DNA of 64,000 nt from Bugula neritina (Eukaryota; Animalia; Bryozoa). Of the stretch, positions 309-51,997 are shown in pieces; position 1 is the first letter of the stretch; every line of letters begins with the position of its first letter. Position numbers and translations under genes: made by a program. The stretch is from positions 10,972,818-11,036,817 of the forward strand of contig OZ037772.1 in assembly GCA_964035545.1 (NCBI GenBank). Direction: 5' to 3'. The notes under the pieces were generated by a model. That model was not told the origin of the DNA. It was given only the letters and a program-made list of their open reading frames with translations, and did not search any database.

Positions 309-3300
309 TCAGTCATCTTCTCCTGAAGAGCTCAATGAATCTTTGGAAGCATAGAGGTCATTGTCAAGCATCTCCACTCTGGGTTTATTAACGACTGCGT
401 ACACAACTTCACCACCTTTTTCTTCCTCCACCTTATTAGGAGCTCTAAAACACAATTTCTGTTTTTCAGCAAACATAAGAATGTAATCTGTATGGTGGGT
501 GTGTTTGATAATTGTATATATAATATAAACTACCACCAATTTTTATAACAGCAGTGTAATTAATATTCTACTATACAATAGTTTCAACTGATGACATTAC
601 TATAGCAGGTACTTGCTGACACTACAAAGTAAGAACTTGTTGACACTACACAGCATGTAGTTATTGAGACTATATAGTAAGAGCTTGCTGACACTACACA
701 GCAGGTAGTTGTTGACACTATACAGTGAGTGATTGTTTTCATTAAAAAACTTTCAATACTCACGTATATAGTATATTATATATCTTTTTACAGTTTTAAC
801 TTATACGCAGTTTTTGCAATACCATGCAGGTACTTGAAGTATTAAAAGTACTGAGTATTTTTACATTTTGACACCCCTAATTAAAATTGTAATATGTATC
901 AGCATGCTGTTGTACCCTTACCCCTCTACTCTCGCTTTATCCACCACTGTTTCAGTGACATCAGTAGCAGGTGCTTCCCCAGGTTTTACTGCAGAGTAAT
1001 GCAAGTCTACACCATCAACTCTCACATCCTCTTCTGAATACTGAGTTGGTGTCAATTCCACAGAGGAATAATCCATACCTGCAGTACATTACCAAGTAGT
1101 ATTATACCTGCAGTACACTACCAAGTAGTATTATACCTGCAGTACATTACCAAGTAGTATTATACCTGCAGTACATTACCAAGTAGTATTATACCTGCAG
1201 TACGTTACCAAGTAGTATTATACCTGCAGTACACTACCAAGTAGTATTATACCTGCAGTACATTACCAAGTACTATATTATACCTGCAGTACATTACCAA
1301 GTACTATTATACCTGCAGTACATTACCAAGTAGTATTATACCTGCAGTACATTACCAAGTAGTATTATACCTGCAGTACATTACCAAGTACTATTATACC
1401 TGCAGTACATTACCAAGTAGTATTATACCTGCAGTATATTACCAAGTAGTATTATACCTGCAGTACATTACCAAGTACTATTATACCTGCAGTACATTAC
1501 CAAGTAGTATTATACCTGCAGTATATTACCAAGTAGTATTATACCTGCAGTACATTACCAAGTACTATTATACCTGCAGTACATTACCAAGTAGTATTAT
1601 ACCTGCAGTATATTACCAAGTAGTATTATACCTGCAGTATATTACCAAGTAGTATTATAATTTATATATTCAACTTTGCATGAAGTTGATAGCAGGTAAT
1701 TGTTTAATAAAAATCACTATTAAACTTTTTTAACTGTATACACACTTATTCATTGTTGATCTTATCTGATAGAATTTTATAGTACAGCTCTGCTACCCAA
1801 ACAGGACAAAGGGGAGATAACTATAAGTGAGGATCTCATATAGTACAGCTGTTCTTGAAACAATTTAAGCTAATTACTATGTACTACCAGAACTACCAGA
1901 ACTACCAGAACTACCAGAACTACCAGAACTACCAGAACTACCAGAACTACCAGAACTACCAGAACTACCAGAACTACCAGAACTACCAGAACTACCAGAA
2001 CTACCAGAACAACCAGAACTACCAGAACAACCAAAACTACCAGAACAACCAGAACTACCAGAACTACCAGAACAGGACAAAGCAGAGATAGGTTAGAAAA
2101 TATGTACATGTTACTGGTGGCTGGCTTCCTAATCCAAAATTCTATAGATATATTTTAGAGCATTTATTGTATTTTATTTTATCCTCACATGCTGTAATTT
2201 ACCTTTTACTAACTTTTAGCTGTTATGGATTGGGTCTACAGTTCATTAGGCTATAATTGATATAGATTTTACAGCTTTTGCTGTTGAAATAAATCTAAAG
2301 TTATTAGAAAATGATCCATTTTTTGAAAGAATGACAATTTTGTTGGATCTAAATACAAAGAAAAACTTGCACCTCTACTTAATTATGTAACAATTAAGTA
2401 GCCAAACATATTTTCTGTTCCAGCCATATCATTTATCATCATGATTTATCCTATATTCCTATTAGGTACTATATATGTTTACATTTACTCATGTTTTCAA
2501 GAAATATTTATTACGTACACTATAGGTTTTCTGTGAGGTTTTAATAATTGATCCCGGCCAAGTCAAAATTTCCAACATAACTTGGACTGCAAGTTATAGG
2601 TACATACTATTTGCCATACCTTCGGTGTAGAACTTGCCAGTAGTTCTGTTGGATGGTTGGGGCGCTAAATCAGATGCGATGTCCTTATCTTGTATTATGT
2701 CATCAGTATTTCTACTAAAGACAAAACAGAAGAACGCTACATATTGATACTTTTTTATGCCAGATGGCATGCTATATAATAATAATTGTTGCAAAAGCAA
2801 TAGTTTGTAAAATAACATGTTAAGTTAGATACCATGTTGAAATCACGCTGTCTTTACACAGAAATTTTTAAAACCTTGTACTCAGTATATTATTCCAAAT
2901 AAATTTATTGTTTACTTTCTGTCTAAATATTTAGTATGACATTATTGAAAAGCATCAAAATATTCATATATTCCTTACAGACAATTAAATGATATCTCAT
3001 TGCTACTGTTTATAGAATATTTCTGTTTTCTCATATACCATATAATGTACTTCTATTAGGTAAAAACAGTATATTGTTTATAACTATTGAGCTATCAAAT
3101 ACCAGGACCTAAAAATATTTGATGAAAAGGATCTGCTCTAGACATATATCATGTAAAAACTATAGTTTTTAAACTGCATTAAGGTTACTATAATGATTAT
3201 TTTAAATCAAAATAAATCGGCAATTTTATCAGGAAAATGACTATAATTTGTTATTTATATGCATTCTAATGAACTTCATATAATTTACAAAAAAAAACAT

Positions 3301-6300
3301 TGTATGAAACCTTATAAGTTTCTACTAGTCTCACCTTCTTCTAAACTTTCTACAGAGCAAACAAAACAGTACTATAATAACAACCACCAGTATCAGTCCA
3401 CCTCCACCAGCTGCCACTGCAATTATGTTGGTCTGCTTCTCAAAAAACTGTTTTAGTGCATTTGGAGTCTCTTCTAAAATATAAGAAAGCAATATGGTGA
3501 GCTGCAATACATACATTGTTACTTTATTAGACGCTTTCAAGAAGTTACTTATTTTTTTGAGACTCAAATTGAACAGTATTAAATTCATTACGATGACAAA
3601 ATATTTTTTAAATTAGATATAAACAACAAAGAACATTAAATAAATGCTCTATAATATTGGGAATCAAAATCAGTTAACAATGCAAGTTACTCAGAACTTT
3701 ATTACACACATGCTGCTTGGCTTGTAGAAGTCTTTGCTAATATTGTGTTTGAAAAGTATTTTGTTATTGTTGAAATAGTTGGATCTGTGGTGCTGTTATT
3801 AGTAACACTTGATTTGGTACTTGTGCTAGTAGTCTTACTCGTGCTTGTAGTCTTACTCATACTTGTAGTTGTACTAGTACTTGAACTGGTGCTAGTTCTA
3901 GTTGGAGTAGTAGTACTGGTGCTGGTAGTTGTACTAATTGGAGTTGTAGTAGGAGGAGTACTAGTGGCTGATGAATTGGTAAAAACTGCAAAAAAAATTC
4001 AACAGCTCATAACTCTTAACTTGTATTCTAAACAGCATACATGTATATTATTCTAAGATAAGAAAATCAATTAGATATTACATGTATGTTTACTTTTATA
4101 TTTTATTAGGAAGCCAGGAAATTCGTCAGCAGAATTTGTAGTTAAACTAAATAGAAGAGAAGAGGTGTCAGGGTTGATGGGCAGGTACTGAGGGGGAGGT
4201 GGCATTCTGATGTTTCGGCATGAATAGAGGTCATCAGTTGGCTTTGAGCTCAGTCTAAATTCATCACCAGAAGATTCACATTTTGTTAAAGATCCAATAG
4301 CCATGAATATGAACTCTAACTGTATTCCTGTAATTCCTCTGAGATCTGTCAGGTTGAGTCTATAATGTTGATTGTTACCATAGAGATTAGCATTCTGTAT
4401 ATTAAATTCTTTATGACTCATGATGTAACCACTGGAAGATATTGAGGCTGGTATAATAGCTAGATTTGATGTTTTCATAAAAGAAAGTGGCAGAGCTGCA
4501 AAAAAAGAAACAAATACAGTCTCGGTTAACGAATATTATTGAGAAAGTATTAAATTATTATATTTTTAAATCAGCACCACATAAAGTGTCATAAAAACTT
4601 TTTTCAACGAAGCATTTTCTAGTTAAATTATTACTCAAAGTTGAGCAGGATTTCTGGGCAAATTTAAAAATAAATTTTATAAGCAATTAGAAGTGACCTT
4701 TCCTCCATGCTGACAAATTTACAATTCAATTTACAAACTTCAGTGATCTATAATGTTTTTATGTAACTCAACAAGAGTAAAACTGTGACAGCTAGAGATC
4801 AAATACGCCACTTTATAATGCCATAGTTAATATTAGAGCTCATTGTCTCTATGTAGATCTGTTTTGAACTTCTGGCAGTGTACAAAACTTAATCTTATAA
4901 TTATAAACTTTGGCCGCAAAACAACTCAATAAAAGTAGCAAATGTAAGTGAAGTTGCGTTTATACCTCTGCTGAAAAAAGTACCGAGTTTAAGTTAATAA
5001 TGCTTGTCCGGGTACCCCTTTATAGTCAAACCGAAACTCGTTGAAATCATATTGATGCGGTTGCTCACTTTCTGAAATTGAAATTTGACTCGCATAATAG
5101 CTATTTGATGCCCTTTGTAAACGTCGTGAATTAGTGAAGCGGAAAGCATAAAAGCGATAATTGAGAAGGCGTAGGCTATGTAATTATAACCGTATAAGTA
5201 CGTTGTCTAATCGCCAATGTAATAACTAAATAACGATGTTTACAAGGAGTTATTACTCCTATTCTAAAATTGGCCGATTAAGTTATCACAGTACAAAAAT
5301 TTCAACGGGTGGCTTTTACAATGCAATGCAACTCGGAGAAATTTCAACCCGGCCAAATTGAAATTTTGACCGAAAATCGTGAAGGTATAAACGCAACTTA
5401 AGCTTAAAATTGAAAAGTAGTAATGAATGACTTAAAACATCAACAAAAACATTTTTTTTAAAAAATCAAGATACTATTTAACTCATGTGGCAAAGTTATA
5501 TAATTTTTATATGCAAATTATTGAATATACAAACTTTATGCTGGTGCATATGTCGATAAAATAAAATTGCACAATTTATGACATATAGGTTTTTTAAATG
5601 CAGTTAATTAAGTATTGGGCAAAAGTTATACACCACAGAGAGTAGATACAAGTAAATAGTGGGAAAATTAGTAATACATCTGATAAAGGGTCGAATCCAC
5701 CAAATAAAACAACAAACTAAATTTTGAACTAAATGGCTCAATTTATAGTTGATCTGACACACTAAAAATAGAAATGTTAAAACAAAAGCTAACATATATG
5801 AAACTATGTACATTTCGCTTGAATTAACAGCTAGAAATGACTCAATAACTCAAATCTGTTCACCTGGAACCATATCCAATGATACACTGAAATTATACAT
5901 GCTTTATCTGCTACAAGTATTATTTAAATTTTATATCAACGACACATAAGTAAATGGATACCATTAAATAAAAGTATTTTATAATGGTATATATAACATT
6001 ATACTAAAGAATTAAGCTAGCTTGCAGTACCAAACACGAAATATCATATTTCTTAATTAACATTATATGGAGTAAATTAAAGTTAGTTCAATTCAAATGC
6101 TTAATTGATATGTATAAAAAGAGCACACTCATGAAACCTTACCTGTAAAGGTCAAGGTGAATCCCAGTGTTGAACCAGCAGGCAATCTAAGTTTAACTCC
6201 TGTCTTACTGTATGATTGATGTCCATTAATAGCCGCTTTATCATCATTATCTGGACTACAGTTTGGTTTTCTAGGAATGGGACTACCACTAGAGTCTACT

Positions 6301-39653: not shown

Positions 39654-42600
39654 CTATGCATCAGAATTTAAAGATTTGGATTCTGGGTTAAAATCTTCTT
39701 TACCAGAGTGATGTTTCTTCCACTTCTTGTACAGTTCAGTGATTATCTCCCCAGCAACAACGTCTGTCGTATTTTGGGCAATCAGTCTCATGCAAAACAC
39801 TCCATCCAGACATAGGTACTGCCCTGTAAACACATGTTATATGAGAGTGAGTGAGTGAGTGAGTGAGTGAGTGAGTGAGTGAGTGAGTGAGTGAGTGAGT
39901 GAGTGAGTGAGTGAGTGAGTGAGTGAATGAGTGAGTGAGTGTTACTGATTTAATAAATGAAAGAGATAGTTGTGAGTTAAGGTAGAGTAATCAAGTATTG
40001 GCTACGTAAGAAAGTGAGTCTAATATCATAGAGTAGTTAGTGAGTATAAATATTAGGCAGGGAAAGTTATAACCAAAAGGAAGAAGAACGTCACACCTAC
40101 CAATAAAAACGTCCACATCATGCATATCAGAATGGCTGTCTGCGTCCACCACTCTCATGATATTCAGATACTTCAAGATAAAGTTCTTGCCAGCTCCTGG
40201 TCTCAGTGTCTTTAGCAGCCAAATCAACAGTCCTAAACACAATCACTCTTTCACTTAGTATACGCACTCTTAGCCAGTGTTTCTCAAAGCACAGTTATAC
40301 ATGAGGAGCATAGTGATATCAACCTACACAACCTCATGAGACAAGTAAAGAACATTTTAAGAACCCAGATGCAGTTTTGCAAATTTATTTATATAATAAA
40401 TTGAAATTCCTTCCTAGTTTTATAAAGTTGATTTGGATTATATGTCCAAAATACTTAAAACGGTTTATAAATGGTGTAAATGCAGTAGTGTAGAAATTGA
40501 GCAAAGTCTACTTTTTGGATGAAAATTTAGCAAAAGAAGTTCTCAACCCTTGCCCACAAAAAAGTATTTATTAAAGAATCAAAGAGCCTAGGCTATTAGG
40601 ATTTGCCTGCTACAGCACCTTAATATGCTATAAACAGTGTCTAAGGTGAAGTGAAAAGCCTCAGGGTGATAGAGAGAGCTTACCCACAATGCTGAGAGCC
40701 GCTACAATCACCAGCCACCACCAAATCACCAAAAATATCTTCTCATTAAACAGGTTCACGGTCAACACACATTGCAGGGTGTATCTCTGGATGTTACTGC
40801 CCATTCGTCGTACCTACAACGTGGACACATATATTGACTACCACCTTCATATCTCTACTAGTTTTATTTTGATGTAATAAGGTAGTTGTAAAAAATTTCT
40901 GAAATAATATTGGTAACTTTATAAAGTAATTGATGCATTTTCTACATATTATTAGGATAATAGGATGCATATGATTATAGTTTCAAATAAAATTCTATGA
41001 AATATTCTTTCAATTTTCAATAACAGTTTGTAGCTTTCTGTCAAATGCTCTATCAGAAGATCTATTCAACCAGATCATACAAAAAAAGTTAGCCATAAAC
41101 TAAATTCTTATAGAGCCCATCTGAATTTAGGGGACATCTATTTGAGCACCCTTATAAACTTTCCTGACTGTAGAGCTCCATGTCTATATCTAACAACCAC
41201 CATAAGCTAAAATTTCAGCTACATGCAGTCCTATGACTTTGAAACTCATTAATGATACTGACCGCAAAGTCACAGTAAGTAATTCTCGGGAACATCGGGT
41301 TCTCAAGGTAAGCTCCGTCATCTTTCATAAGTGTTTGAAGGGCTCTGTATCCGTAGTCTGCATATCCGTCACCTGTATCATACCCACTAGTTATAAGAAT
41401 AAGCTAATAATAGAGTGCAAACGATATCTTAAGTTGGAGTTGTGGCCCACAAGAGTGTAGAGCATTTTACTTCATATAATTAGTGCACTTAATAGTCATA
41501 TTTAATCATTTTTTGCCATTTTTAGCTATAAAAAACATTAATAAGCTCAGTTTTTCGCTACAGTAGAAGCACAGTAGATAAAGTTGGAGTTGTGCTCTTT
41601 CACGCTGAACTATAGAGGTAGAAATAAACAAAGTTGGGAAATGTAAATCTTACCCATCATAAGTTGAAGCATGAAAATAAGTGCAATGGGTGCGGCAATG
41701 TACAGCAGCTTGGTGATCAGATACATGAAGAACAGGTATCGGCCATATTTGTTTCCCAGAGGAATCTTTGTCTGTAACACAGAGTTATCCTTCCTCTACC
41801 AATTTCACTACTTAGCAGTTATCTTTCTTTGAATTGTTACTATTATTTGGTTAATAATTTGCACAACTTTTAAAGCAGTCATGAGTTGGTTATAAAATTT
41901 CTTCAATTCATGACTCGATAATGTGCAAAAGGCAGCCATTTTTAAAATGGCTGCCTTTTGCATGATATATAACCTCAACTGGAACCAAATTCACAGAGTA
42001 CTCATATGTTTATGGTGTATCAAGTATAGCATTTATTGAGCTATTCAGATGTCTATGATATATAAAGTAAAGGAGCTATACTAGATTATTCAGATGTCTA
42101 TGGCATAGAGTACATAACACTCACAGAGCTACCCAGATGTCTATGGTAGGTGATGTGGCGGTCTAGCTGCTCTACTAAGTACTTGTTGGTGTCGTCTCTA
42201 GTGGCCGGGTTCAGATTATCAGCACTGCAGGCTACTTTGGTAATTGCCTCCACATCATAACCACTGGTTGCCATGGCAAACTTCCAGAAATACGCTGTAA
42301 ACATCATTGTATACTAATGCTACTGTCTCTGTCCCGGTAAGGCTATAGACTGTGTTACTTATCATGCTGACAACATCGTTTGAGGGCTTTCAACGTGGCC
42401 CATAAGCAAGTATGAATTAATGCCTTTTCTGACATCACCAATGTGCTACTCGAATTTGACCAATCACATGCAATGTTCTATCTACCCAGTGCTTTAACCA
42501 TTAGATGTCATAAACGATTCTATAATGCATTATAATGAAAAAATATTTTACAACATAAATAACACTATTCATTAACTACTATAATAATAACATTTATTTG

Positions 42601-45600
42601 ACAGTAAAGCCATAATCTCAAGTTTCTGGTTGTTATGTTGTTATTTTCTGCTATATTTTATGCATTTCACGCAGTTTTGCCAAATTGCCAAAGCTTTGAG
42701 TGTTGTCATAGAAATGATAATACTTTGTACTGCAGCAGACATGCCATGAATTATCATATTTCGAAATAAACCAGGAAAAATCCTTGAAGTTATATATTCA
42801 TCAGCCAAAACACTTGTTTTAAGTATTATCAATGTTCAAGGCTTTAGCAATCAATTGTATTACAGACAAAAAATTGGAGATTTGAATTTCTAATTGATTA
42901 GTCATGGGTATCATTCTACAAGTTGAATTTGAAATTCTGCCAGAGGTTTGAACTTTAGGTCTAAAGTTTCACGGGATATGTTACTAAACTAGGTTAACAA
43001 ATATATAGATATAGTCGCAGTACCCGCCAGAGATTTGAACTTTAGGTATAAAGTTCTCATTGCTCTTACAGGATGCCACTAACACTAGGTCAAAGAGTAG
43101 AGGAAGACATAGCCTTAGTACCTGGGATAGCGATAACCAGAATCATGAATCCGAGTATGATGGGCACCCACTGGTAGTAGGGCAACTCCTGATGTCTAGC
43201 AGAGCTGTGGTCTGGACTCGCCAAGTTTACAGGTCCGGGCAAGTTGGCGTCTGGTGCAATGTAGTACGTGTTTTTGATCTGTAGAACAGAAGAGCAAGTT
43301 GAAACAACATGCTTACCATGAATGAATGCAAATTGAAGGGTTATTTTTGTTGTAGAGTTTAGGCTATTGAATGATTTGCGGGCATTCTCTTTCACACTAC
43401 TTTTTTCATCTCCGTAAAAAACACACACCCAGGCAACAAACAAATACTACACACTGGATGAATTACATATAACTTTTACTTATGTAAGCTAGAGTTGAGC
43501 AACTACAATTTTTCAATGTAATATTAATTTCATAGCGAAGCTTGTGCTTTGAAAAAAATTTTATTTTATAAAAGTACAACAAGTACATAGGGGTTATATA
43601 CCTTTTGTAAAAACTGAAATAATGTTCTAAAGATTGCGATGAATTTTCAATATATAAAAAAATACATCTTCCAGAATGGCTTAGCCAGGTATATATACAA
43701 AATGTTAGTAATTTTAGTATAAATTTCATTAATAAATCACAGAATTTCACAATAAGTTACAGCAGGCTTGACTTATAATTTTTTGTCATGGAATTTACAT
43801 AAACACAAGTTTAAATCATCACTTTTATTATTAAAAAATAAATATTGGTTTGCAAAAGTTATAGGTTTAGGTAAAAAGCAAGTTTTTAGTATTATTAGAA
43901 TAGTATATATAGTAGTATTATGAATTTTTTCTGAGAAAATAACTTCTTTTGCTACATTTTCAAACTATAACACAGGCTTTTCTCAATTTCTCCATTACTG
44001 CATCAAACTCTAAAACTTTTTGAGAACTAAGTGGAATTGCTCACATTATTTTGCATGGAAACAGCAAAAATTTTGCTAAAAGCAGGGCAAAAAGCATGCA
44101 AGAGAAATATAGAGTCCTAGTATAAGACGAAAGCTTCACGTCCATGGCATGATTACGTACTGTAGGTATATAGTTATACTACTTAGAGACAATTCAACAG
44201 GTAGACTTGCTACATGTTGTATAGTTATACTACTTAGAGACAATTCAACAGGTAGACTTGCTACATGTTGTATAGTTATACTACTTAGAGACAATTCAAC
44301 AGGTAGACTTGCTACATGTTGTATAGTTATACTACTTAGAGACAATTCAACAGGTAGACTTGCTACATGTTGTATAGTTATACTACTTAGAGACAATTCA
44401 ACAGGTAGACTTGCTACATGTTGTATAGTTATACTACTTAGAGACAATTCAACAGGTAGACTTGCTACATGTTGTATAGTTATACTACTTAGAGACAATT
44501 CAACTGGTAGATTTGCTATAGGAACACATTTTTTACTGATTGATAAACAAGTGACAATAGCAGTTCCTGCTGACGCGAGCTGCTTCTAGTCAGCTGACCT
44601 TTAAAGACATCACTAAATATCTGTCTCCTATCCTGGCATCTTTACCCTAGCCTTAGTTCCCTGCATACCATCTACCAGCAATATTATTATTATAGTTGAA
44701 TGCTGAAGAGCTAGCTGGTCTTGAGGCTATATGGAAGCAAGCCATGATAGCACTAGAGGGTTGTTTACATTTCTGTTATAAACAGTAGTTACATGAGTAT
44801 CAAATGATCATCAACTACTGTCAACAGAGCCTATGTAAACTAAACTGTGTATATGTAATGACACAGCATAATAAACACAAGATGGCTCCTGGATTCTTTC
44901 AAACAGAATACATAGAGCTGTTCCTGCTAGAGTGCTACTAAACTGTGTATTTTGTGATGCTGTGATGCAAAATTTTTCATAGAGTTTTGTAAGCAACTAA
45001 AAAATATACCAAGGAGTCAAGCTGACTGCAAAGTTGCAGTATTTTCATTTATACTTGTGTATATAAGTTTTCATTATACTTGTGAAAATAGCTACCAATG
45101 ATAGCCAAAATAAATTTTAAATTATAAATTTTTATTACTATAAAATAAGTTTTTTAGATGTGCCCAACACACCGTATTCACCTTCATATCTGATTAACTA
45201 TGTGCATAGAGTATAAACCACTGAACTGAAACTATAACCCTTATAGTTCAATGGTATAAACTACATTACAGAGAAACGGGACTTTTCAGAACTTTATAGG
45301 GAATCGTCTTCTTTTTAATGTTGAATTGTGACAATTTAACCTCAATATTAACGCTGTTACTTTTTATTGATTGAAAAATTAGTTTTAAATTTTGACCTAT
45401 AAACACAATTTAAATTTTTTATCAATAATAATTACATACTAGTTAGTCAACATAAAACCTCATTTCATTCCTTTTTCACCAATTACTTTTCTTAGATGCT
45501 TAGCTCAAGCCAAGTCTGTTTAAACCAAAATCTAGGTCAACCAGGTAAGTTAAATTATTTATAAAAGTTTACCTTATATGGGAGTACTCAAGTATCAAAT

Positions 45601-48600
45601 GATAGCCAGGCTGATGCCCTTGTAAGCTAGTGTATAGTGTAATATTATTATCTTTTTATTAGTTAGATGAGCTTTGTGTCAATATACAATGTCAATTCCA
45701 ACTGATAGCTGTAGCATAGGAGACAGCCAGTTAGCCGTTAGTTGCTGTAAATGCGTTGAAGACTTGTTGCTTTATATCTACACCAATCCCACAAGCTGTG
45801 GAATAAATGGAGCACATTTGAAGTCAGAAGAAATGAGCATATGTTTTCATTAAAATTCAAAAAAAACTTTTAAAGTTGATTTACATTTGAGGAAGAGTGC
45901 ACATCTGAAAAGTTTTAATTTGTATATTTAGTTCAACTTATTACATAATGTTTTGCAAACCCGAAGTTTGGCTCCACTATTTAGCATAAAAAACCAATTT
46001 TCCAGCATCTGACAGAATATAAAAAAAACAATTACTTGTAAACCAAGTTTTTTTCATTAAACTTTATTAATATATTTGACTAGCAGCCAACTAGTGAACA
46101 AACAATGTGTTTGTCACAATACTATATGATCAACTGCAGATTTCACTTGTATTGCCTCTACACTGAATGCTTTACTGTAGATATCACTTGCTGAACTTTG
46201 AAACCTCCTGCTGGTTCACACAATAGTAGATGCATACAATCTAATGTTTTTACCATTCATAATAAAGCAATGTAAGTTACAGATAAATTAACTAAAAAAC
46301 TGTGAGCAACTTTACTGTATACATGACCACCCAGGACAAACTCTAGTAAGATTAAAAATTGATTCAAGTTTTTTATGGCTGACAAGCTTTGAAAATGGTT
46401 TCCAACATGAAATATCTGGTTAGGTGTGGATTTGTCATTCCAAACTTAATACTCCCTTACAACAGAAGTTAACTCATTAATATTGTTGATTATTAAATCT
46501 TTTTCACCCGTAGAGCAATTTTTGCAGGTGAACTGCTTAATATTTCGAAAAGCTTCTCAGAATTTCCTTAAATGGCTATGATCTAAATAATAAGGATGGC
46601 AAACAGCAATCAACTTTGGTACAGTATAGTGGAGAAATCATGAAAGCCTTCTTTCCATATAAGAAAGATGATATGTAAAATAAGTTTAAACTTGTCCCCT
46701 TCAAACGCAATTCCATTAAAGAACTCTCGTTAACCATAATTTAATTAAAGAACTTAAGCTATCAAAATTTCTCTATTACTGCACCTAAATGTAGGTAAAA
46801 GTTTTGCAAAGGTCACCAAGGTCGTTTCCACGGCAACCTGATGCCATACCTACCCAGCAGTAATTGTCAGCGTACTTTATCCAGTTGTCGTGAAACTCTT
46901 TGGGTGTGAAACAGTCAATGGGGTCACCGACATACGTCTTGGTAACCAGAAAGAGGGAGGATACAACTATGAGCCCTACACATAAAGAGCTACAGGTTAG
47001 AAATCACGGGCTAAGCTGGTGAAAGTACATGTAGATTATAATAAAGCTCACTGAAAATGGGTTAGAACACGGATGTCCAACCTTTTCAGAGTACTGGCTA
47101 CCAGAAAGGAATATTCTGTGGTGAGGGCCACATTGTAAACTTTAGTTTGAGCTGGAGGGCCACAGCGTCAATATTTTCATATTATTTTATTCAAAATTTT
47201 AGGAGTCATTACACAATAAAGTCACAATAGTTAATGCTGGCTACATGTTTTGTAGAATGTGTATGAACAAGATGTTTAAAAGGTGGTTTTTACTCTAATT
47301 CATGTATACTGTAAAAAATAATTTCAGTTGTATATCTTTGAGGGCCACATAAATGTAGGCTAAGGGGCCACATCCTGCCCTGGGGCCGCCTGTTGGGCAG
47401 CCCTAGGTTAGATGACAGAAATATCAGTCTCTACATAAAGAGTTGTGCCCTCGTAACAAATGATGCCGTGGTATGCAACTATAGGAGGACAATACAGAAA
47501 CTGGTAGGGAGGGGTTACAGTACCATTCAATAGAGAGTGAATGCATTGCATCACCCTGTTTGGTCCAGATTAGATAGGATGTTGAGAGGCTGCCATGTCT
47601 ATGACACTGAATAAATATTTGTATAGCTTAGTATTATAGACCTACACTCCTTGAGCACTGCTTAGACACATGTTAAGGCGTATCAACTCATGTTACCATC
47701 ATTTGGGAAATTGACTCTAAATTACAAAATCATCAACTGATGTTGGTTGATAAGGAGTGGATATCAAATTTCACATTAGGCACATTTTTACAATCATTTT
47801 CAAAAGGTTTGATAAAATCTAATTAAACTCTCTCATAAGTATTTATAGTTTGCAGGAGCTTTTAAACCCTGAAGTATTTAATTCTTCAATCGGCTGGGGG
47901 TAAAAATCTCCCTCCCCATAAACTCCCTCCATCTTTACACTCTTCTACAGGCCTGCATTGTAAATTCATGTATAATGCTTTTATATACCAACAAGCAATC
48001 TGGTTTTATTGTACTTTGTAGTTTAATTTTGGTCTTTCATTGATAAGGAGTAACAATATGTATGCTCTTCTACTTCAGTGGTTAAAGATGAAAGGTTAAA
48101 AGTTGGTAACTCAGTTGATACAAACTGAAATGAGAAGCTGTGTGAGTCAGAGTTTGTCCCTTCCCTACATGCTAGACTACAATCACATAGTAATTGCTAA
48201 CAAGTAAACCTGAAGAGTTATTGAGTCTATAATAAAGTTTACTTCTAACTAGTATAACAACCTATTTTAAATTAAAATGCAAATTCTATTTGATGCTTCA
48301 AGTCACTCAGTGCACTTCACTTTGTTCTTGTGATAAAAAATAACTTGATAGATCAAGGTATAATAAGTCACACTACAAGCTTGGCCAATTTAAAATCAAT
48401 TCTCCAAAAATTATCTAAAAGAGGTTGTGACTTTGAAAAGTCAACATTAATTATCAAAGCTTTACAGTGGCTAGGAATTCAAAAATGAATTTAAATTAAT
48501 AGTAAGGAGTTGTGAGTTACTGCAAACAAGGTAGTTCTAGATTATTGGCTTAAAATGACAAACCACAGGCTATAAAGAACTAGGAAGAATATGCAGAGTA

Positions 48601-50193
48601 GAAAGTATATGTGAACTTTGCATGAAATGATGTTAAGATTATTTAATACTCAAAACAAATAGAATGACAAAGTCACATAATAACATGACAAAGAGAATAA
48701 AGAAGTTACATGATTGAGGAAGCAGAAATTAGAATGAAAGAGTAGAATTAAAGAGAGTAGAGAGAATAACTACAACATAAGTTAATATAATAGCGGTGGA
48801 GTGGGGGGCAAAGTGGGGAGGAGGGGGACAGCGGATGGAATTCACAGATAGAAATCTAGAATATTCCAGTGGGCCACGCTGTCTCTTACCCAACAATAGT
48901 TATCGGCATAATTTATCCAGTTATCGTGAAATTCTAGCGGAGTAAAGCAGTTGATAGGGTCACCTACGTATGACCTTGTGCCAATGAAGAGAGAGCAGCA
49001 AATGAAGAACCCTGTTGTGAGGTACACACTGTCATGGCTGATTTACAGAGCATATTGCACAAAAGCTACAAGCTAAACTTGTCCACAATTTTTAATGTTT
49101 ACTATCGGAATCTCTTAATATATGAAACTTAGCAACAACTTTTACAGAATATTTGAAATTATATTTCGACTGAGAGGTTTGCGAATTTAGGCAGCCGTTA
49201 CAGGACTAGAGGCTTATTAGAAGCTCAGTCCACTCATACTCATAGCTGTATATTAACACTATTACATAATACTAATTTTCATGTTATTGCAATAATTTTC
49301 TATAACTTTATACCAGCATATCTGTGCTAAAGAAAAGAGGGATACAGGCTTTTCTTACACTGTGTAGAGCTTATACTTTAGTGATCTATTAACACATGAC
49401 TAGTTATAACAATTCTTCATTCAAACTTATGTATTTACACTGAAAGGAATTACATCAAATATAAGAATATTTGAATAATGTTCAATATGAGATTATACCA
49501 GCAATGAGCCTATTCAAGCATTCAGTTCTACAGCTGACAACATAATACAAGAGTAGCTATTTTCTAGAGTTTTAGGCTTTTATTTTACATAAAACTAGGC
49601 AAGGTGTTAAGATGGACCAGTTTTTCAATGAAGTGACTGTAAATCCACTCCAAGATAAAATCAAGCATATTCCTGCTAGCATTAATACATTATTATTTAA
49701 TTCTTTTTCTAACATTTTCTTGAACAAATATTGTTCTGTAAAACGTGACACATCAAATTACCTTACATGGTTTTAGGGCTTTGAAAACTTGTTTTGCTGA
49801 AAATTCTAGCATGACGATGTCAAAATGCTATATATTTAAACTAACTCTAACTCTTGTTTTAAGTTAATAACATATTTTAGAGTGATTAGCAAAAAGAAGA
49901 TTACTATTAGTAAAACAAAGTTTTAGGGTTGCCACAAATAAACTATCAATGATTGCTGTATTTTCATTCAAGCAACATAGTTGTTGAAAAATTTGCTTAA
50001 TAATCCAAACCAACTTTTACCAAATAAAACTTAAAACAAATCGTTTTATTTAGCTTTGACCGAGTTGCAGTGTTATACCCCCCCTTTTTTTCTCACCTAT
50101 TGTGTATCTGTTACTCAGTCTATCAAACATGTCATCATCTCGCCTCTTCAGCATAGACACTCCCTTCTTCAGGGACTCCACTAAATCCGACAT
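39654..50193 (-). CDS. inx: Innexin (gap junction/hemichannel protein)
   Basis: Exons: 50097-50193 ([20 protein letters not shown]); alternative exon 2 at 48890-49011 or 46854-46975 (YVGDPI.CFTP.EF..NW..Y.DNYCW); 43122-43278 (signature YYQWVP); 42125-42294; 41654-41771 (YLITKLLY); 41263-41372 ([10 protein letters not shown]); 40684-40813 ([20 protein letters not shown]); 40101-40232; 39654-39823 ([13 protein letters not shown]). Confidence 0.93.
39843..39941. repeat. (GAGT)n microsatellite
   Basis: Directly visible; last innexin intron. Confidence 0.95.
44169..44515. repeat. 51-bp minisatellite, about 7 near-identical copies
   Basis: Unit TATAGTTATACTACTTAGAGACAATTCAACAGGTAGACTTGCTACATGTTG; innexin intron. 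Confidence 0.95.
46854..46975 (-). CDS. inx: Innexin alternative exon 2b (TM1/EL1)
   Basis: 122 nt, TAG acceptor, GTAGGT donor, encodes [41 protein letters not shown]; absent from the ORF track. Confidence 0.88.
47068..47405. mobile_element. hAT-type MITE
   Basis: Imperfect TIRs CACGGATGTCCAAC / GTTGGGCAGCCCTA, internal GGGCCACA subterminal repeats, 8-bp target-site duplication GGTTAGAA / GGTTAGAT (7/8 match). Confidence 0.7.
48890..49011 (-). CDS. inx: Innexin alternative exon 2a (TM1/EL1)
   Basis: 122 nt, CAG acceptor, GTAAGA donor, encodes [41 protein letters not shown]. Confidence 0.88.
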
Positions 50194-51997
50194 CTTGAAT
50201 TCTTGTGTGTTTCCTCTCTCAGAATTTTAATGGACTTCCCTCAACATCTACGTCTGCTTCAACGTCTGCTTCTACACCACCTTTGCCTTCGCAGCCGCAA
50301 CTAGTTCTAAGCTGTTATTATTTAGTGATGTAACTTCGCTGCTATAGGTTAGACTGCGTGCCTAGATTTAACGAAGTCACCCTACACGTTATGCCTGACT
50401 GCACGCGATAATAAAGTATCAAATGCTCGGCAGGCTAACAACACGCGAGGCTATGAAGTGAAACATGGAGGACGTGCTATGCTTCTAATCATTTCAAATC
50501 TATTGAATGTATAGATCACGTATTGAAATTGACACACAAGCTAAATCTTGTAAATTTATAATCAATTCTTTATCTTTCTAAACGTAATATGCATGACAAA
50601 TTTAGCATAATACCAACTTGGTGAAAACAAAGCACTAAACGATGTAGTATCAAATATTTGCCTTATTTGTGTAAATACTGTAACATTTCATGATGCATTG
50701 CTCAACCAACAAAATAATTGATAAAGTATTAAATAATAACTAGACCAGAGTCATATAGGTGTACGAAGCGTGCAAACTTTTTACCCTCAACTTTATAGCA
50801 GGTTGCTACATGTGTTGCCTGACCCAACCCATCTGTTTTGTTTCTAAAACAAGTACAAGCCAAAGTAAAAGGACATTGAAGTAAAAACACTGATACGGGC
50901 AGCTCCAAATGACTTTGTGCTGATGTAACTTCGAAAGTAGAACTTAAAACTGTGCTCTGGAAGTGTTAACCTACCAATGGCTGAATCACAAGAATCATAC
51001 CTCACAGAAAATGTTCAGGATTTAAAAAGCTGAATGACAAAAGCTTCTACATTCCTTTCATATCTCACCTTTCTTTCAATACATGAAACATAATATTCTG
51101 TAGGAATAGCATAATATCTCAAGACTAAATATAGCGGGCAGGTGAATGTAGGCTATCCCATTACAATATCAGTTGCTGTTTTAGAGCCCAGTCTATACAA
51201 TAAAATGGTGTGATACACTGAACTATAGTTGACCAAATTGTAATACAGATGAAAATAGTATACTTGCTAGGTTTCATTCAAAACTTGTAGGCAATAAAAT
51301 AATATTTCAAGTTGCTGCTAGACAGTTAGCTTACAGGTTTGGTGACTGTTTTTTTCAGGATATTACATAACATAGCATAATATAGCATAATATATTGTAT
51401 ATGAATACAATGGATATATGTATATGATATAATAATGCAGTATGATATAACATAATATAATATAACATATGCATATAATGAATATATGTTAATAATATAG
51501 TGCCATAATAGCTTGAATTAGACTGTAAATAATTGTTAAGCTGTATATTAGAGAGCTTTGAAATTAGAGTGGTAACTATACGCCATAACATGCTATCATA
51601 ATATAAAGGGTAAACTTCTGTTATCTGTGTATAACGATTGATAACACAGGGTTATTGTGAACCAAGTAATCTTTAGTGTTTGCACTGTGAGTAAAGTATA
51701 TATCAAATAGCATGCCCTTTAGAGACTAAAGACAGCTGTATGGTTCACTGGAGACATGCTAGGCCCATACGTGTAATATACTAAGAGAACTATAAATGAT
51801 ACTCCTTTAGAAAAGAGCACAGTTAGTTGCAGGTTAGAATCCCGGTTGTTTCACAAAAAGATTTAGCAAGATTTTTCCTTCCCCAACTTTTTTTAGTCCT
51901 TCACGCATTTAAATTACCAACAATTACTTTCTTTTTAAAGAGTGTCAGCACATGTATGCAGGAAGCATTAAAAAATCCCTATTTTAAAGTTGGGTTA

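What the first reader, a model, noticed from the sequence alone, without database searches (positions are those of the whole stretch)
46854..49011. Innexin with tandem-duplicated, mutually exclusive exons encoding TM1 and extracellular loop 1
Seen: two intact 122-nt exons with identical phases (1 to 0) lie between a single exon 1 and exon 3. Including both or neither frameshifts the protein. They are heavily diverged at synonymous sites yet keep both EL1 cysteines; differences include [13 protein letters not shown] vs [13 protein letters not shown] and [12 protein letters not shown] vs [12 protein letters not shown] (charge changes). Established: TM1 lines the pore and extracellular loops govern hemichannel docking; alternative N-terminal exons of Drosophila shakB give isoforms forming rectifying heterotypic junctions. 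Inference: one gene makes two channel isoforms with different docking or permeability through internal mutually exclusive splicing.
Basis: partly seen in the sequence, partly recalled or inferred. Interest (0 to 1): 0.8.

Follow-up and report, generated by a model that had tools for sequence, protein, structure and literature searches.

The report
Innexin gene with duplicated TM1/loop exon
A gap-junction (innexin) gene of an invertebrate, probably a bryozoan, carries two old, intact tandem copies of the exon for its first membrane helix and first outer loop. RNA data show the second copy in use, but use of the first copy, and so true either/or splicing, is still only inferred.

Summary
A minus-strand, 9-exon innexin gene (401 aa with either copy) has two 122-nt versions of exon 2, 2a at 49011-48890 and 2b at 46975-46854. 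Both have the same phase and canonical AG/GT sites, and both match Pfam Innexin positions 15-54. Including both copies or neither shifts the frame and gives an early stop. The copies share 28/40 residues. Their synonymous sites are saturated (25 of 38 differences fall at third codon positions), both loop cysteines are kept, and the flanking introns are unrelated. This is an old duplication held under purifying selection.

The only RNA data available are assembled contigs of one sample from a ~95%-identical organism. They join exon 1 to 2b to exon 3 at exactly the predicted sites. They do not cover exon 2a at all. Contigs drop minor isoforms, so this shows 2b is the dominant form there, not that 2a is silent.

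No second exon 1 exists in the window. No other innexin locus in this genome has such a pair. A tree hints that the duplication predates related species (84/84 support; AU p = 0.095). No paper describing this was found.

Verdict: a real and probable mutually exclusive exon pair, half verified. It is a new member of a known kind, of moderate interest.

The parts
50097..50193 (-). Exon 1, coding part (ATG at 50193; 32 codons plus 1 base). It encodes the N-terminal helix with the DRLSNRYT motif. It is the only exon-1-like sequence in the window.
   Evidence: An RNA contig covers 50096-50260 and joins it to exon 2b.
50194..50260 (-). 5' leader, colinear with the genome at least this far. The same RNA contig has about 800 more letters upstream, some of which map to 50950-50921.
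   Evidence: (record 3, pieces and length).
48890..49011 (-). Exon 2a: 122 nt encoding TM1 and extracellular loop 1 (G + [40 protein letters not shown]). It has intact AG/GT sites. It was not seen in the RNA contigs.
   Evidence: PF00876 positions 15-54, E 4.8e-11; aligns to INX-6 residues 46-77; no RNA cover.
46854..46975 (-). Exon 2b: 122 nt, the same phase and the same profile positions as 2a (G + [40 protein letters not shown]). It is spliced to exon 1 and to exon 3 in RNA.
   Evidence: E 1.9e-11; joint 46974/50096 in X1 and X2, absent from DNA run X3; the loose end at 46854 is the start of exon 3.
43122..43278 (-). Exon 3: the rest of EL1, the YYQWVP motif and TM2. It starts in phase 0 and accepts either exon 2.
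   Evidence: PF00876 positions 55-105; loose-end letters; conserved in relative L032.
42125..42294 (-). Exon 4 (cytoplasmic loop).
41654..41771 (-). Exon 5 (TM3).
41263..41372 (-). Exon 6 (EL2, first cysteine).
40684..40813 (-). Exon 7 (EL2 second cysteine, TM4).
   Evidence: E 1.7e-14.
40101..40232 (-). Exon 8 (C-terminal cytoplasmic part).
39654..39823 (-). Exon 9, coding part up to the stop codon.

Best explanation
This is one innexin (gap-junction or hemichannel subunit) gene. An old tandem duplication made two interchangeable versions of the 122-nt exon that encodes the first transmembrane helix and the first half of extracellular loop 1. A mature mRNA carries one version.

Exon 2b is the default. 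It is of the ancestral type, with Asp/Lys/Lys at the three variable loop positions, as in paralogues and relatives. It dominates in the sampled RNA.

Exon 2a is a derived version. It has Asn/Leu/Asn at those positions, so it has two fewer loop lysines and one fewer aspartate. It also has two extra cysteines in TM1. It is most likely used in a cell type, stage or condition not represented in the available RNA, or only at a low level there.

Exclusivity is enforced at least by the reading frame. Because 122 is not a multiple of 3, mRNAs with both exons or neither meet an early stop (codon 76 or 60) and should be removed by nonsense-mediated decay.

The swapped segment aligns with the TM1/E1 segment of INX-6 and the pannexins. 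From published structures (cited from memory), that segment lines the pore and helps hemichannels dock. The two isoforms would therefore differ in permeation, gating or docking partner.

Shown here: the gene model, the frames, the selection on the exons, and exon 1-2b-3 splicing. Inferred: use of 2a, decay of the frameshifted forms, and any functional difference.
For: - Exact gene model and frame arithmetic.
- Both exons hit PF00876 positions 15-54 with equal strength, 42.9 and 44.2 bits.
- The other exons follow in profile order.
- Synonymous sites are saturated while pN is 0.158 overall and 0.059 in the loop. Both cysteines and the YVGDPI motif are kept.
- Neutral drift cannot keep this similarity.
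- The exon 1-2b joint and the 2b-exon 3 continuation appear in two RNA runs and are absent from the DNA run.
- There is only one exon-1-like sequence in the window.
- 2a and 2b are each other's closest relatives in the genome, at 74% against at most 58% for paralogue exons.
- The 2b-type exon of a relative (L042) has the same boundaries. It shares 24/40 third positions with 2b but only 13/40 with 2a. The tree puts 2a outside a (2b, L042, L034) group with 84/84 support. This suggests that 2a has stayed intact since before those lineages split.
- The exon aligns to INX-6 residues 46-77 and PANX1 residues 51-85, with both cysteines in register.
Against: - No RNA contig covers exon 2a in either run. 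Depth is 0 over 48758-48946, and the single piece at 48952-48981 is misplaced 5'-leader sequence.
- In X2 the contig runs from exon 1 into 2b without branching.
- No 2a-type exon or protein was found in a search of 1.84 billion representatives or by the word search.
- A more distant relative (L034/L038) has a 2.8-kb intron 1 without a second copy.
- The AU test does not reject a young, lineage-specific duplication (p = 0.095).
- Only one RNA sample, from a ~5%-diverged organism, was available, and only as contigs.
Confidence: 0.6

Rival explanations
1. Exon 2a is no longer a working coding exon. It was used for most of its history, which explains the old purifying selection. It is now silent, or is spliced in only rarely or unproductively, for example together with 2b to give a decay-targeted mRNA. 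The gene then effectively makes one protein, the 2b form.
For: - Exon 2a has zero cover in the only RNA runs, while the 2b form has contig depth 1001 and 442.
- No 2a-type sequence was found in any protein collection searched.
- The relative L034/L038 has a single copy after a 2.8-kb intron 1.
- All three charge-changing loop substitutions lie on the 2a branch when polarised against paralogues and relatives.
Against: - The exon still has an open frame, canonical AG and GTAAGA sites, both cysteines and every family-invariant residue.
- Its loop part has only 4 amino-acid changes although its synonymous sites are saturated.
- Neutral decay would give stops in about 73-84% of cases and about 4-16 of 40 residues identical.
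- Assembled contigs drop minor isoforms of equal length as bubbles. The tool itself warns that contigs show presence, not absence.
Confidence: 0.28
2. Exon 2a belongs to a separate transcript with its own promoter and first exon, as in Drosophila shakB. The two TM1 versions would then be chosen by promoter use and not by internal alternative splicing.
For: The RNA contig shows a long 5' leader of about 0.9 kb. The X2 contig breaks one base short of the ATG, which hints at more than one 5' structure. A short first exon of about 31 aa could escape similarity searches.
Against: - Only one exon-1-like sequence is found in the whole 64-kb window at E <= 5.
- There is no other N-terminal innexin match near the gene.
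- Exon 2a starts in phase 1 with the same 'GG' as 2b, so it needs an upstream exon that ends exactly as exon 1 does.
- Exon 1 is shown to splice over 2a to 2b, so 2a lies inside the same transcription unit.
Confidence: 0.07
3. The pair is an assembly artefact or a chance similarity.
For: None found.
Against: The copies are 32% diverged at the nucleotide level and have unrelated flanks. The DNA run X3 covers the whole interval with contigs identical to the window. Both copies score 43-44 bits against PF00876.
Confidence: 0.01

Closest known systems
Drosophila shaking-B (shakB) isoforms Neural, Neural+16 and Lethal
   Same: One innexin locus gives partially identical transcripts and several proteins. 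Heterotypic pairing of the isoforms produces rectifying electrical synapses (PMC2663713). My recollection is that the isoforms differ in the N-terminal part, up to about the first loop. This was not checked: the paper's text had no hit for 'N-terminal' or 'extracellular loop'.
   Different: From memory, shakB isoforms arise from nested transcripts with different 5' exons. Here there is a single ATG-bearing exon 1. The choice would be made between two internal, equal-length, frame-incompatible exons. Function and rectification are not tested here.
Mutually exclusive tandem-duplicated exons in other channel genes (vertebrate Nav/Cav exon pairs, insect para, RDL and nAChR exon pairs).
   Same: These are equal-length homologous exons that encode a transmembrane or pore-adjacent segment. 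One is used per mRNA. They show old duplication with strong protein-level conservation and are often tissue- or stage-specific.
   Different: The gene family is different. I found no paper that links innexins with mutually exclusive exons: one incidental hit in about 8.4 million texts. Among listed isoforms of 10 mollusc and brachiopod innexin clusters, none differed by such an internal block.
C. elegans INX-6 (PDB 5H1Q) and vertebrate pannexins 1-3 (solved structures)
   Same: Exon 2a residues 9-40 align to INX-6 residues 46-77. Residues 6-40 align to PANX1 residues 51-85, with both loop cysteines in register. So the swapped piece is the end of TM1 plus E1.
   Different: Identity is only about 40-50% in this segment. 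Which side chains face the pore or the docking surface in this protein was not modelled.
ADAM10 gene with two alternative active-site exons in the same genome (earlier scan finding s1-442845)
   Same: It is another old tandem exon pair in this genome. It was reported by another agent to be used one-or-the-other in RNA.
   Different: It is a different gene, and I did not check that report. It shows only that such pairs occur in this genome.

Membership tests
Innexin (Pfam PF00876) | Profile match above the curated cut-off (25 bits) | tested here: met
   Exon by exon: 2a 42.9 bits, 2b 44.2, exon 3 25.3, exon 7 54.2. Exons 4, 6 and 9 give weaker matches in the correct profile order.
Innexin (Pfam PF00876) | YYQW(V)P motif at the start of TM2 | tested here: met
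   '[12 protein letters not shown]' in exon 3.
Innexin (Pfam PF00876) | Two conserved cysteines in each extracellular loop | tested here: met
   EL1: C21 and C39 of both exon 2 versions, in register with INX-6 C58 and C76. EL2: 'ITYCDF' in exon 6 and 'LQCVL' in exon 7.
Innexin (Pfam PF00876) | Four transmembrane helices; forms gap junctions or hemichannels | not testable with these tools
   Only TM1 hydropathy was computed (mean Kyte-Doolittle 1.94 for 2a and 2.27 for 2b). The spliced protein could not be sent to the structure tools by reference. Channel function needs experiment.
Mutually exclusive exon (MXE) pair | Adjacent homologous exons of the same length and phase with canonical splice sites | tested here: met
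   Both are 122 nt, phase 1 to 0, with AG|GG...TGG|GT. They share 28/40 residues and the same Pfam positions.
Mutually exclusive exon (MXE) pair | Including both or neither is incompatible with the protein | tested here: met
   Both gives a stop at codon 76. Neither gives a stop at codon 60.
Mutually exclusive exon (MXE) pair | Each exon is found spliced between the same flanking exons in mRNA | tested here: inconclusive
   Exon 1-2b-3 is shown in runs X1 and X2. Exon 2a is not covered by any RNA contig. Contigs cannot show absence.
Mutually exclusive exon (MXE) pair | No, or only rare, mRNA with both exons | tested here: inconclusive
   No 48890|46975 joint appears among the listed joints (9 further joints were not shown), but 2a is not covered at all.
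Mutually exclusive exon (MXE) pair | The pair is conserved in related species | tested here: inconclusive
   Contigs from relatives are too short. L042 (527 nt) holds a 2b-type exon. L040/L041 hold exon 1 and one exon 2 that lacks both lysines. L034/L038 have no second copy in intron 1. The tree favours an old duplication (84/84) but AU p = 0.095.
shakB-type isoform diversity (alternative first exons or promoters) | Each alternative TM1 version has its own first exon | tested here: not met
   There is one exon-1-like sequence in the window. Exon 1 splices across 2a to 2b. Both versions begin in phase 1 and need the same upstream exon end.

The most novel reading that the evidence does not exclude
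A single innexin gene of a lophotrochozoan (probably a bryozoan) uses internal mutually exclusive splicing to make two channel subunits. They differ only in the TM1/E1 segment, which by homology to solved innexin and pannexin structures should line the pore and take part in docking. The 2b form has two more lysines and one more aspartate in the loop than the 2a form. Cells could then build homotypic, heterotypic or rectifying junctions, or hemichannels of different selectivity, from one locus. The arrangement would have been kept since before related species diverged. This would be the first internal MXE described for the innexin/pannexin superfamily.
Probability: 0.45. Interest if true: 0.6.

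Novelty: new member of a known kind. Interest (0 to 1): 0.42.

Why it matters
Innexins are the gap-junction proteins of most invertebrates. How a limited gene set produces junctions with different partner specificity, selectivity and rectification is an open question. It has been answered so far mainly by paralogue diversity and by the promoter-driven shakB isoforms.

An internal either/or exon that swaps exactly TM1 and the first half of E1 would be a natural experiment. The two subunits would be identical everywhere else. The 12 differing residues, including three charge changes in the loop, could then be tied directly to docking, gating or permeability in paired-cell recordings.

It would also add the innexin/pannexin superfamily to the list of channel families that diversify a pore-adjacent segment by tandem exon duplication. 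If exon 2a proves silent, the locus is still a clean example of a long-conserved duplicated exon whose use has lapsed.

Tried and rejected
1. RNA test. The look-up of sequencing runs gave only two RNA runs, both from one 'symbiont metagenome' sample and held as contigs, plus one DNA run. Read laying is capped at one call and 6,000 letters, so exon 1 to 2b was laid without exon 3. The four predicted junctions could not all be tested directly, and no raw reads were available.

2. An apparent RNA match on exon 2a (loose end at 48981) was rejected as evidence of expression. Its neighbouring letters map to 50950-50921 in the 5' leader. The window has a 30-nt stretch there that is 23/30 identical to 2a. 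The bin depth of 159 equals 1001.5 x 30/189, so the match is a piece of the same exon 1-2b contig. I also considered it as a cryptic splice (50914|48974, GT..AG). I dropped that reading because the upstream frame has no start codon.

3. A word search with the 2a ORF found nothing. The search with the exon 3 ORF found only an unspliced genomic ORF from a relative.

4. A profile made of paralogue L001 plus our exon pieces returned 120 innexins. The best is 40% identical to this protein, so neither our protein nor an orthologue is among them.

5. The metagenome scan with both exon peptides returned only distant genes, each with one exon 2. L033 and P0221 turned out to be orthologues of the paralogue at G000:C8:12840824, not of this gene.

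6. A search of 1.84 billion representatives with exon 2a found no 2a-type exon. The contig behind P0228, which has a 2a-like TM1, has a single copy within 13 kb.

7. A search for a second copy in the relatives' introns found none.

8. A scan for RNA-duplex 'docking/selector' structures timed out and was dropped, because it would be unconvincing without conservation data.

9. Looking for MXE-type differences among annotated mollusc and brachiopod innexin isoforms found none.

Full report
**What is there.** Reading the minus strand and aligning three intronless innexin paralogues of the same genome to it gives a clean 9-exon gene.
- Exon 1: 50193-50097 (ATG at 50193)
- Exon 2a: 49011-48890
- Exon 2b: 46975-46854
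- Exon 3: 43278-43122
- Exon 4: 42294-42125
- Exon 5: 41771-41654
- Exon 6: 41372-41263
- Exon 7: 40813-40684
- Exon 8: 40232-40101
- Exon 9: 39823-39654 (stop)

All introns are AG/GT. With either exon 2 the CDS is 1206 nt, or 401 aa. With both exons a stop appears at codon 76. With neither a stop appears at codon 60.

The exons match Pfam Innexin (PF00876) piece by piece and in order. 2a and 2b both cover profile positions 15-54 with almost equal scores, 42.9 and 44.2 bits. The protein has the YYQWVP motif and two cysteines in each extracellular loop.

**The two copies.** They share 82/120 nucleotides and 28/40 residues. The 38 differences fall 8/5/25 over the codon positions (P = 4e-5 for that skew). 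pS is 0.96, which is saturated. pN is 0.158 overall and 0.059 in the loop part. The flanking introns share nothing. In neutral simulations, an open frame with >=28/40 identity survived in at most 7.5e-5 of trials, even at the lowest divergence tried. Both copies have therefore been kept as coding sequence for a long time.

Within this 216-Mb genome the two are each other's closest relatives, at 74% against at most 58% for any paralogue exon. None of the roughly 18 other innexin loci shows a tandem pair.

Polarising the 12 differences with paralogues and relatives shows that 2b has the ancestral loop residues (Asp20, Lys25, Lys33). 2a is derived (Asn, Leu, Asn) and has two extra cysteines in TM1. 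Counting Lys/Arg against Asp/Glu in the loop part gives +1/-4 for 2a and +3/-5 for 2b.

The exon aligns to INX-6 residues 46-77 and PANX1 residues 51-85, with the cysteines in register. So it is the end of TM1 plus E1.

**RNA evidence.** Only three runs were offered. Two are RNA-seq runs of one 'symbiont metagenome' sample (X1, X2), kept as contigs, holding 7-8% of the words of the 9.8-kb query. That share is about what the exons make up. The third is one DNA run (X3).

I laid them on 44600-50260. I left exon 3 out because of the 6,000-letter limit, and started at 44600 to avoid a 51-nt tandem array.
- In both RNA runs one contig joins 46974/46975 directly to 50096/50097, skipping 3,121 nt with GT..AG ends. 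X1 has a 1,274-nt contig at depth 1001. X2 has a 218-nt contig at depth 442.
- The joint is absent from the DNA run.
- The X1 contig continues past 46854 with letters that read [10 protein letters not shown], the start of exon 3, with two synonymous changes.

So exon 1-2b-3 splicing is real. It starts from the single ATG exon. The source organism is about 95% identical in the exons; of the 6 exon-2b differences, the two listed's table are both at third codon positions.

Exon 2a has no RNA cover. Depth is 0 over 48758-48946. The only piece on it ends at 48981, and its neighbouring letters map to 50950-50921 in the 5' leader. The window has a 30-nt stretch there that is 23/30 identical to 2a. 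The bin depth of 159 equals 1001.5 x 30/189. So this piece is part of the same contig, misplaced because my stretch ended at 50260. It is not evidence for 2a.

Contigs drop minor variants, and two equal-length alternative exons form exactly the kind of bubble that assemblers pop. The result therefore says that 2b dominates in that sample, not that 2a is silent.

**Own first exon?** The exon 1 peptide finds only itself in the 64-kb window at E <= 5. No other N-terminal innexin match lies near the gene. Both exon 2 versions start with the same two bases, which complete a codon begun in exon 1. Exon 1 also splices across 2a. A shakB-like arrangement with separate first exons is therefore unlikely.

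**Relatives.** The paralogue L001 is 82% identical to an innexin of the bryozoan Watersipora subatra. The organism is therefore probably a cheilostome bryozoan; I do not name a species.

This gene's own protein and its orthologues were not among the full-length proteins returned. Short metagenome contigs gave partial orthologues.
- L042 (527 nt) has a 122-nt exon with the same boundaries. It shares 93/120 nt and 24/40 third positions with 2b, against 75/120 and 13/40 with 2a.
- L040/L041 have exon 1 (79% identical), a 405-nt intron, and one exon 2 that lacks both lysines, as 2a does (Gln25, Ala33). The contig ends 950 nt later.
- L034/L038 have a 2.8-kb intron 1 with no second copy.

A maximum-likelihood tree of the exon sequences groups 2b with the L042 and L034 exons (84/84 support) and leaves 2a outside. 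Forcing 2a and 2b together costs 4.8 log-likelihood units (AU p = 0.095). Grouping 2a with the L040 exon is not rejected (p = 0.36). This favours a duplication older than these lineages but does not prove it. Conservation of the pair in another species remains untested.

**Mechanism.** The best-supported reading is a mutually exclusive exon pair. The ancestral-type 2b is the default. The derived 2a is a minor or context-specific alternative. The reading frame, with nonsense-mediated decay, removes double-inclusion and skipped mRNAs.
- Shown: the structure, the frames, the selection, and use of 2b.
- Inferred: use of 2a, the decay, and any difference in pore or docking properties.

I put this reading at 0.6. 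The main rival is that 2a has fallen out of productive use; I put that at 0.28. A separate first exon for 2a gets 0.07.

**Novelty.** Mutually exclusive tandem exons in channel genes are a well-known kind. Innexin isoforms that alter junction properties are known from shakB (PMC2663713). I found no paper linking innexins with mutually exclusive exons. No such block difference appeared among listed isoforms of 10 mollusc and brachiopod innexin clusters. The finding is thus a probable new member of a known kind, half verified. Another agent of this scan reported a similar exon pair in an ADAM10 gene of this genome; I did not check it.

Noticed in passing
window 50891-50920 (minus strand), about 0.7 kb upstream of the ATG: A 30-nt stretch in the transcribed 5' leader is 23/30 identical to exon 2a positions 48981-48952. 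Part of the RNA contig was laid on exon 2a because of it. It is probably chance (1 of 300 shuffles reached the score within 500 nt), but a relic of a third copy is not excluded.
   Followed up: partly
window 50194 to about 51175 (minus strand): The exon 1-2b RNA contig carries about 970 letters upstream of the ATG. That is about 111 fewer than the genome has between 50261 and 50890. So the gene has a long 5' leader with an indel or a small intron. The X2 contig stops at 50192, one base short of the ATG, which hints at a second 5' structure.
   Followed up: partly
window 44169-44518: A nearly perfect tandem array (51-nt unit, 6.9 copies, 99% matches) lies in the intron between exon 2b and exon 3.
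   Followed up: partly
window 45167-45355, 46679-46867 and 47057-47434: High-copy repeats lie in the introns. DNA contig depth is 1,100-6,200 against about 150 elsewhere. They are also present in the RNA runs. One lies directly downstream of the exon 2b donor. The 47.1-47.4 kb element has repeated GTGGCCC motifs and many internal joints.
   Followed up: no
window 39845-39941: A (GAGT)n microsatellite, 24 copies, lies about 20 nt upstream of the acceptor of the last exon.
   Followed up: no
window 48908-49261 (DNA run X3): Two DNA contigs of similar depth (85 and 69) cover exon 2a and the intron upstream. One is identical to the window. The other has 33 differences and 2 gaps in 354 nt. This is either a very divergent second haplotype or a second strain. 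The positions of the differences were not listed, so the exon and intron parts could not be compared.
   Followed up: no
L032:1563-1701 (JGI metagenome contig of a relative), versus window exon 4: The relative's exon 4 lacks 13 codons of the cytoplasmic loop (around [13 protein letters not shown]). Exons 3 and 5 are almost identical in protein.
   Followed up: partly
G000:C8:11040353-11046977 (+), starting about 3.5 kb beyond the window end: Another innexin gene lies on the opposite strand, head to head with this one about 16 kb from its 5' end. Its exon 2 is 47% identical to 2a. Several more innexin genes lie on the same chromosome-scale contig, at C8:11.75, 12.83-12.89 and 5.15 Mb.
   Followed up: no
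L001, L002, L003 (G000:C4:22842802, C4:6231727, C5:666722): Three innexin paralogues of this genome are intronless over the whole domain (393-428 aa open frames). The gene studied here has 9 coding exons.
   Followed up: no
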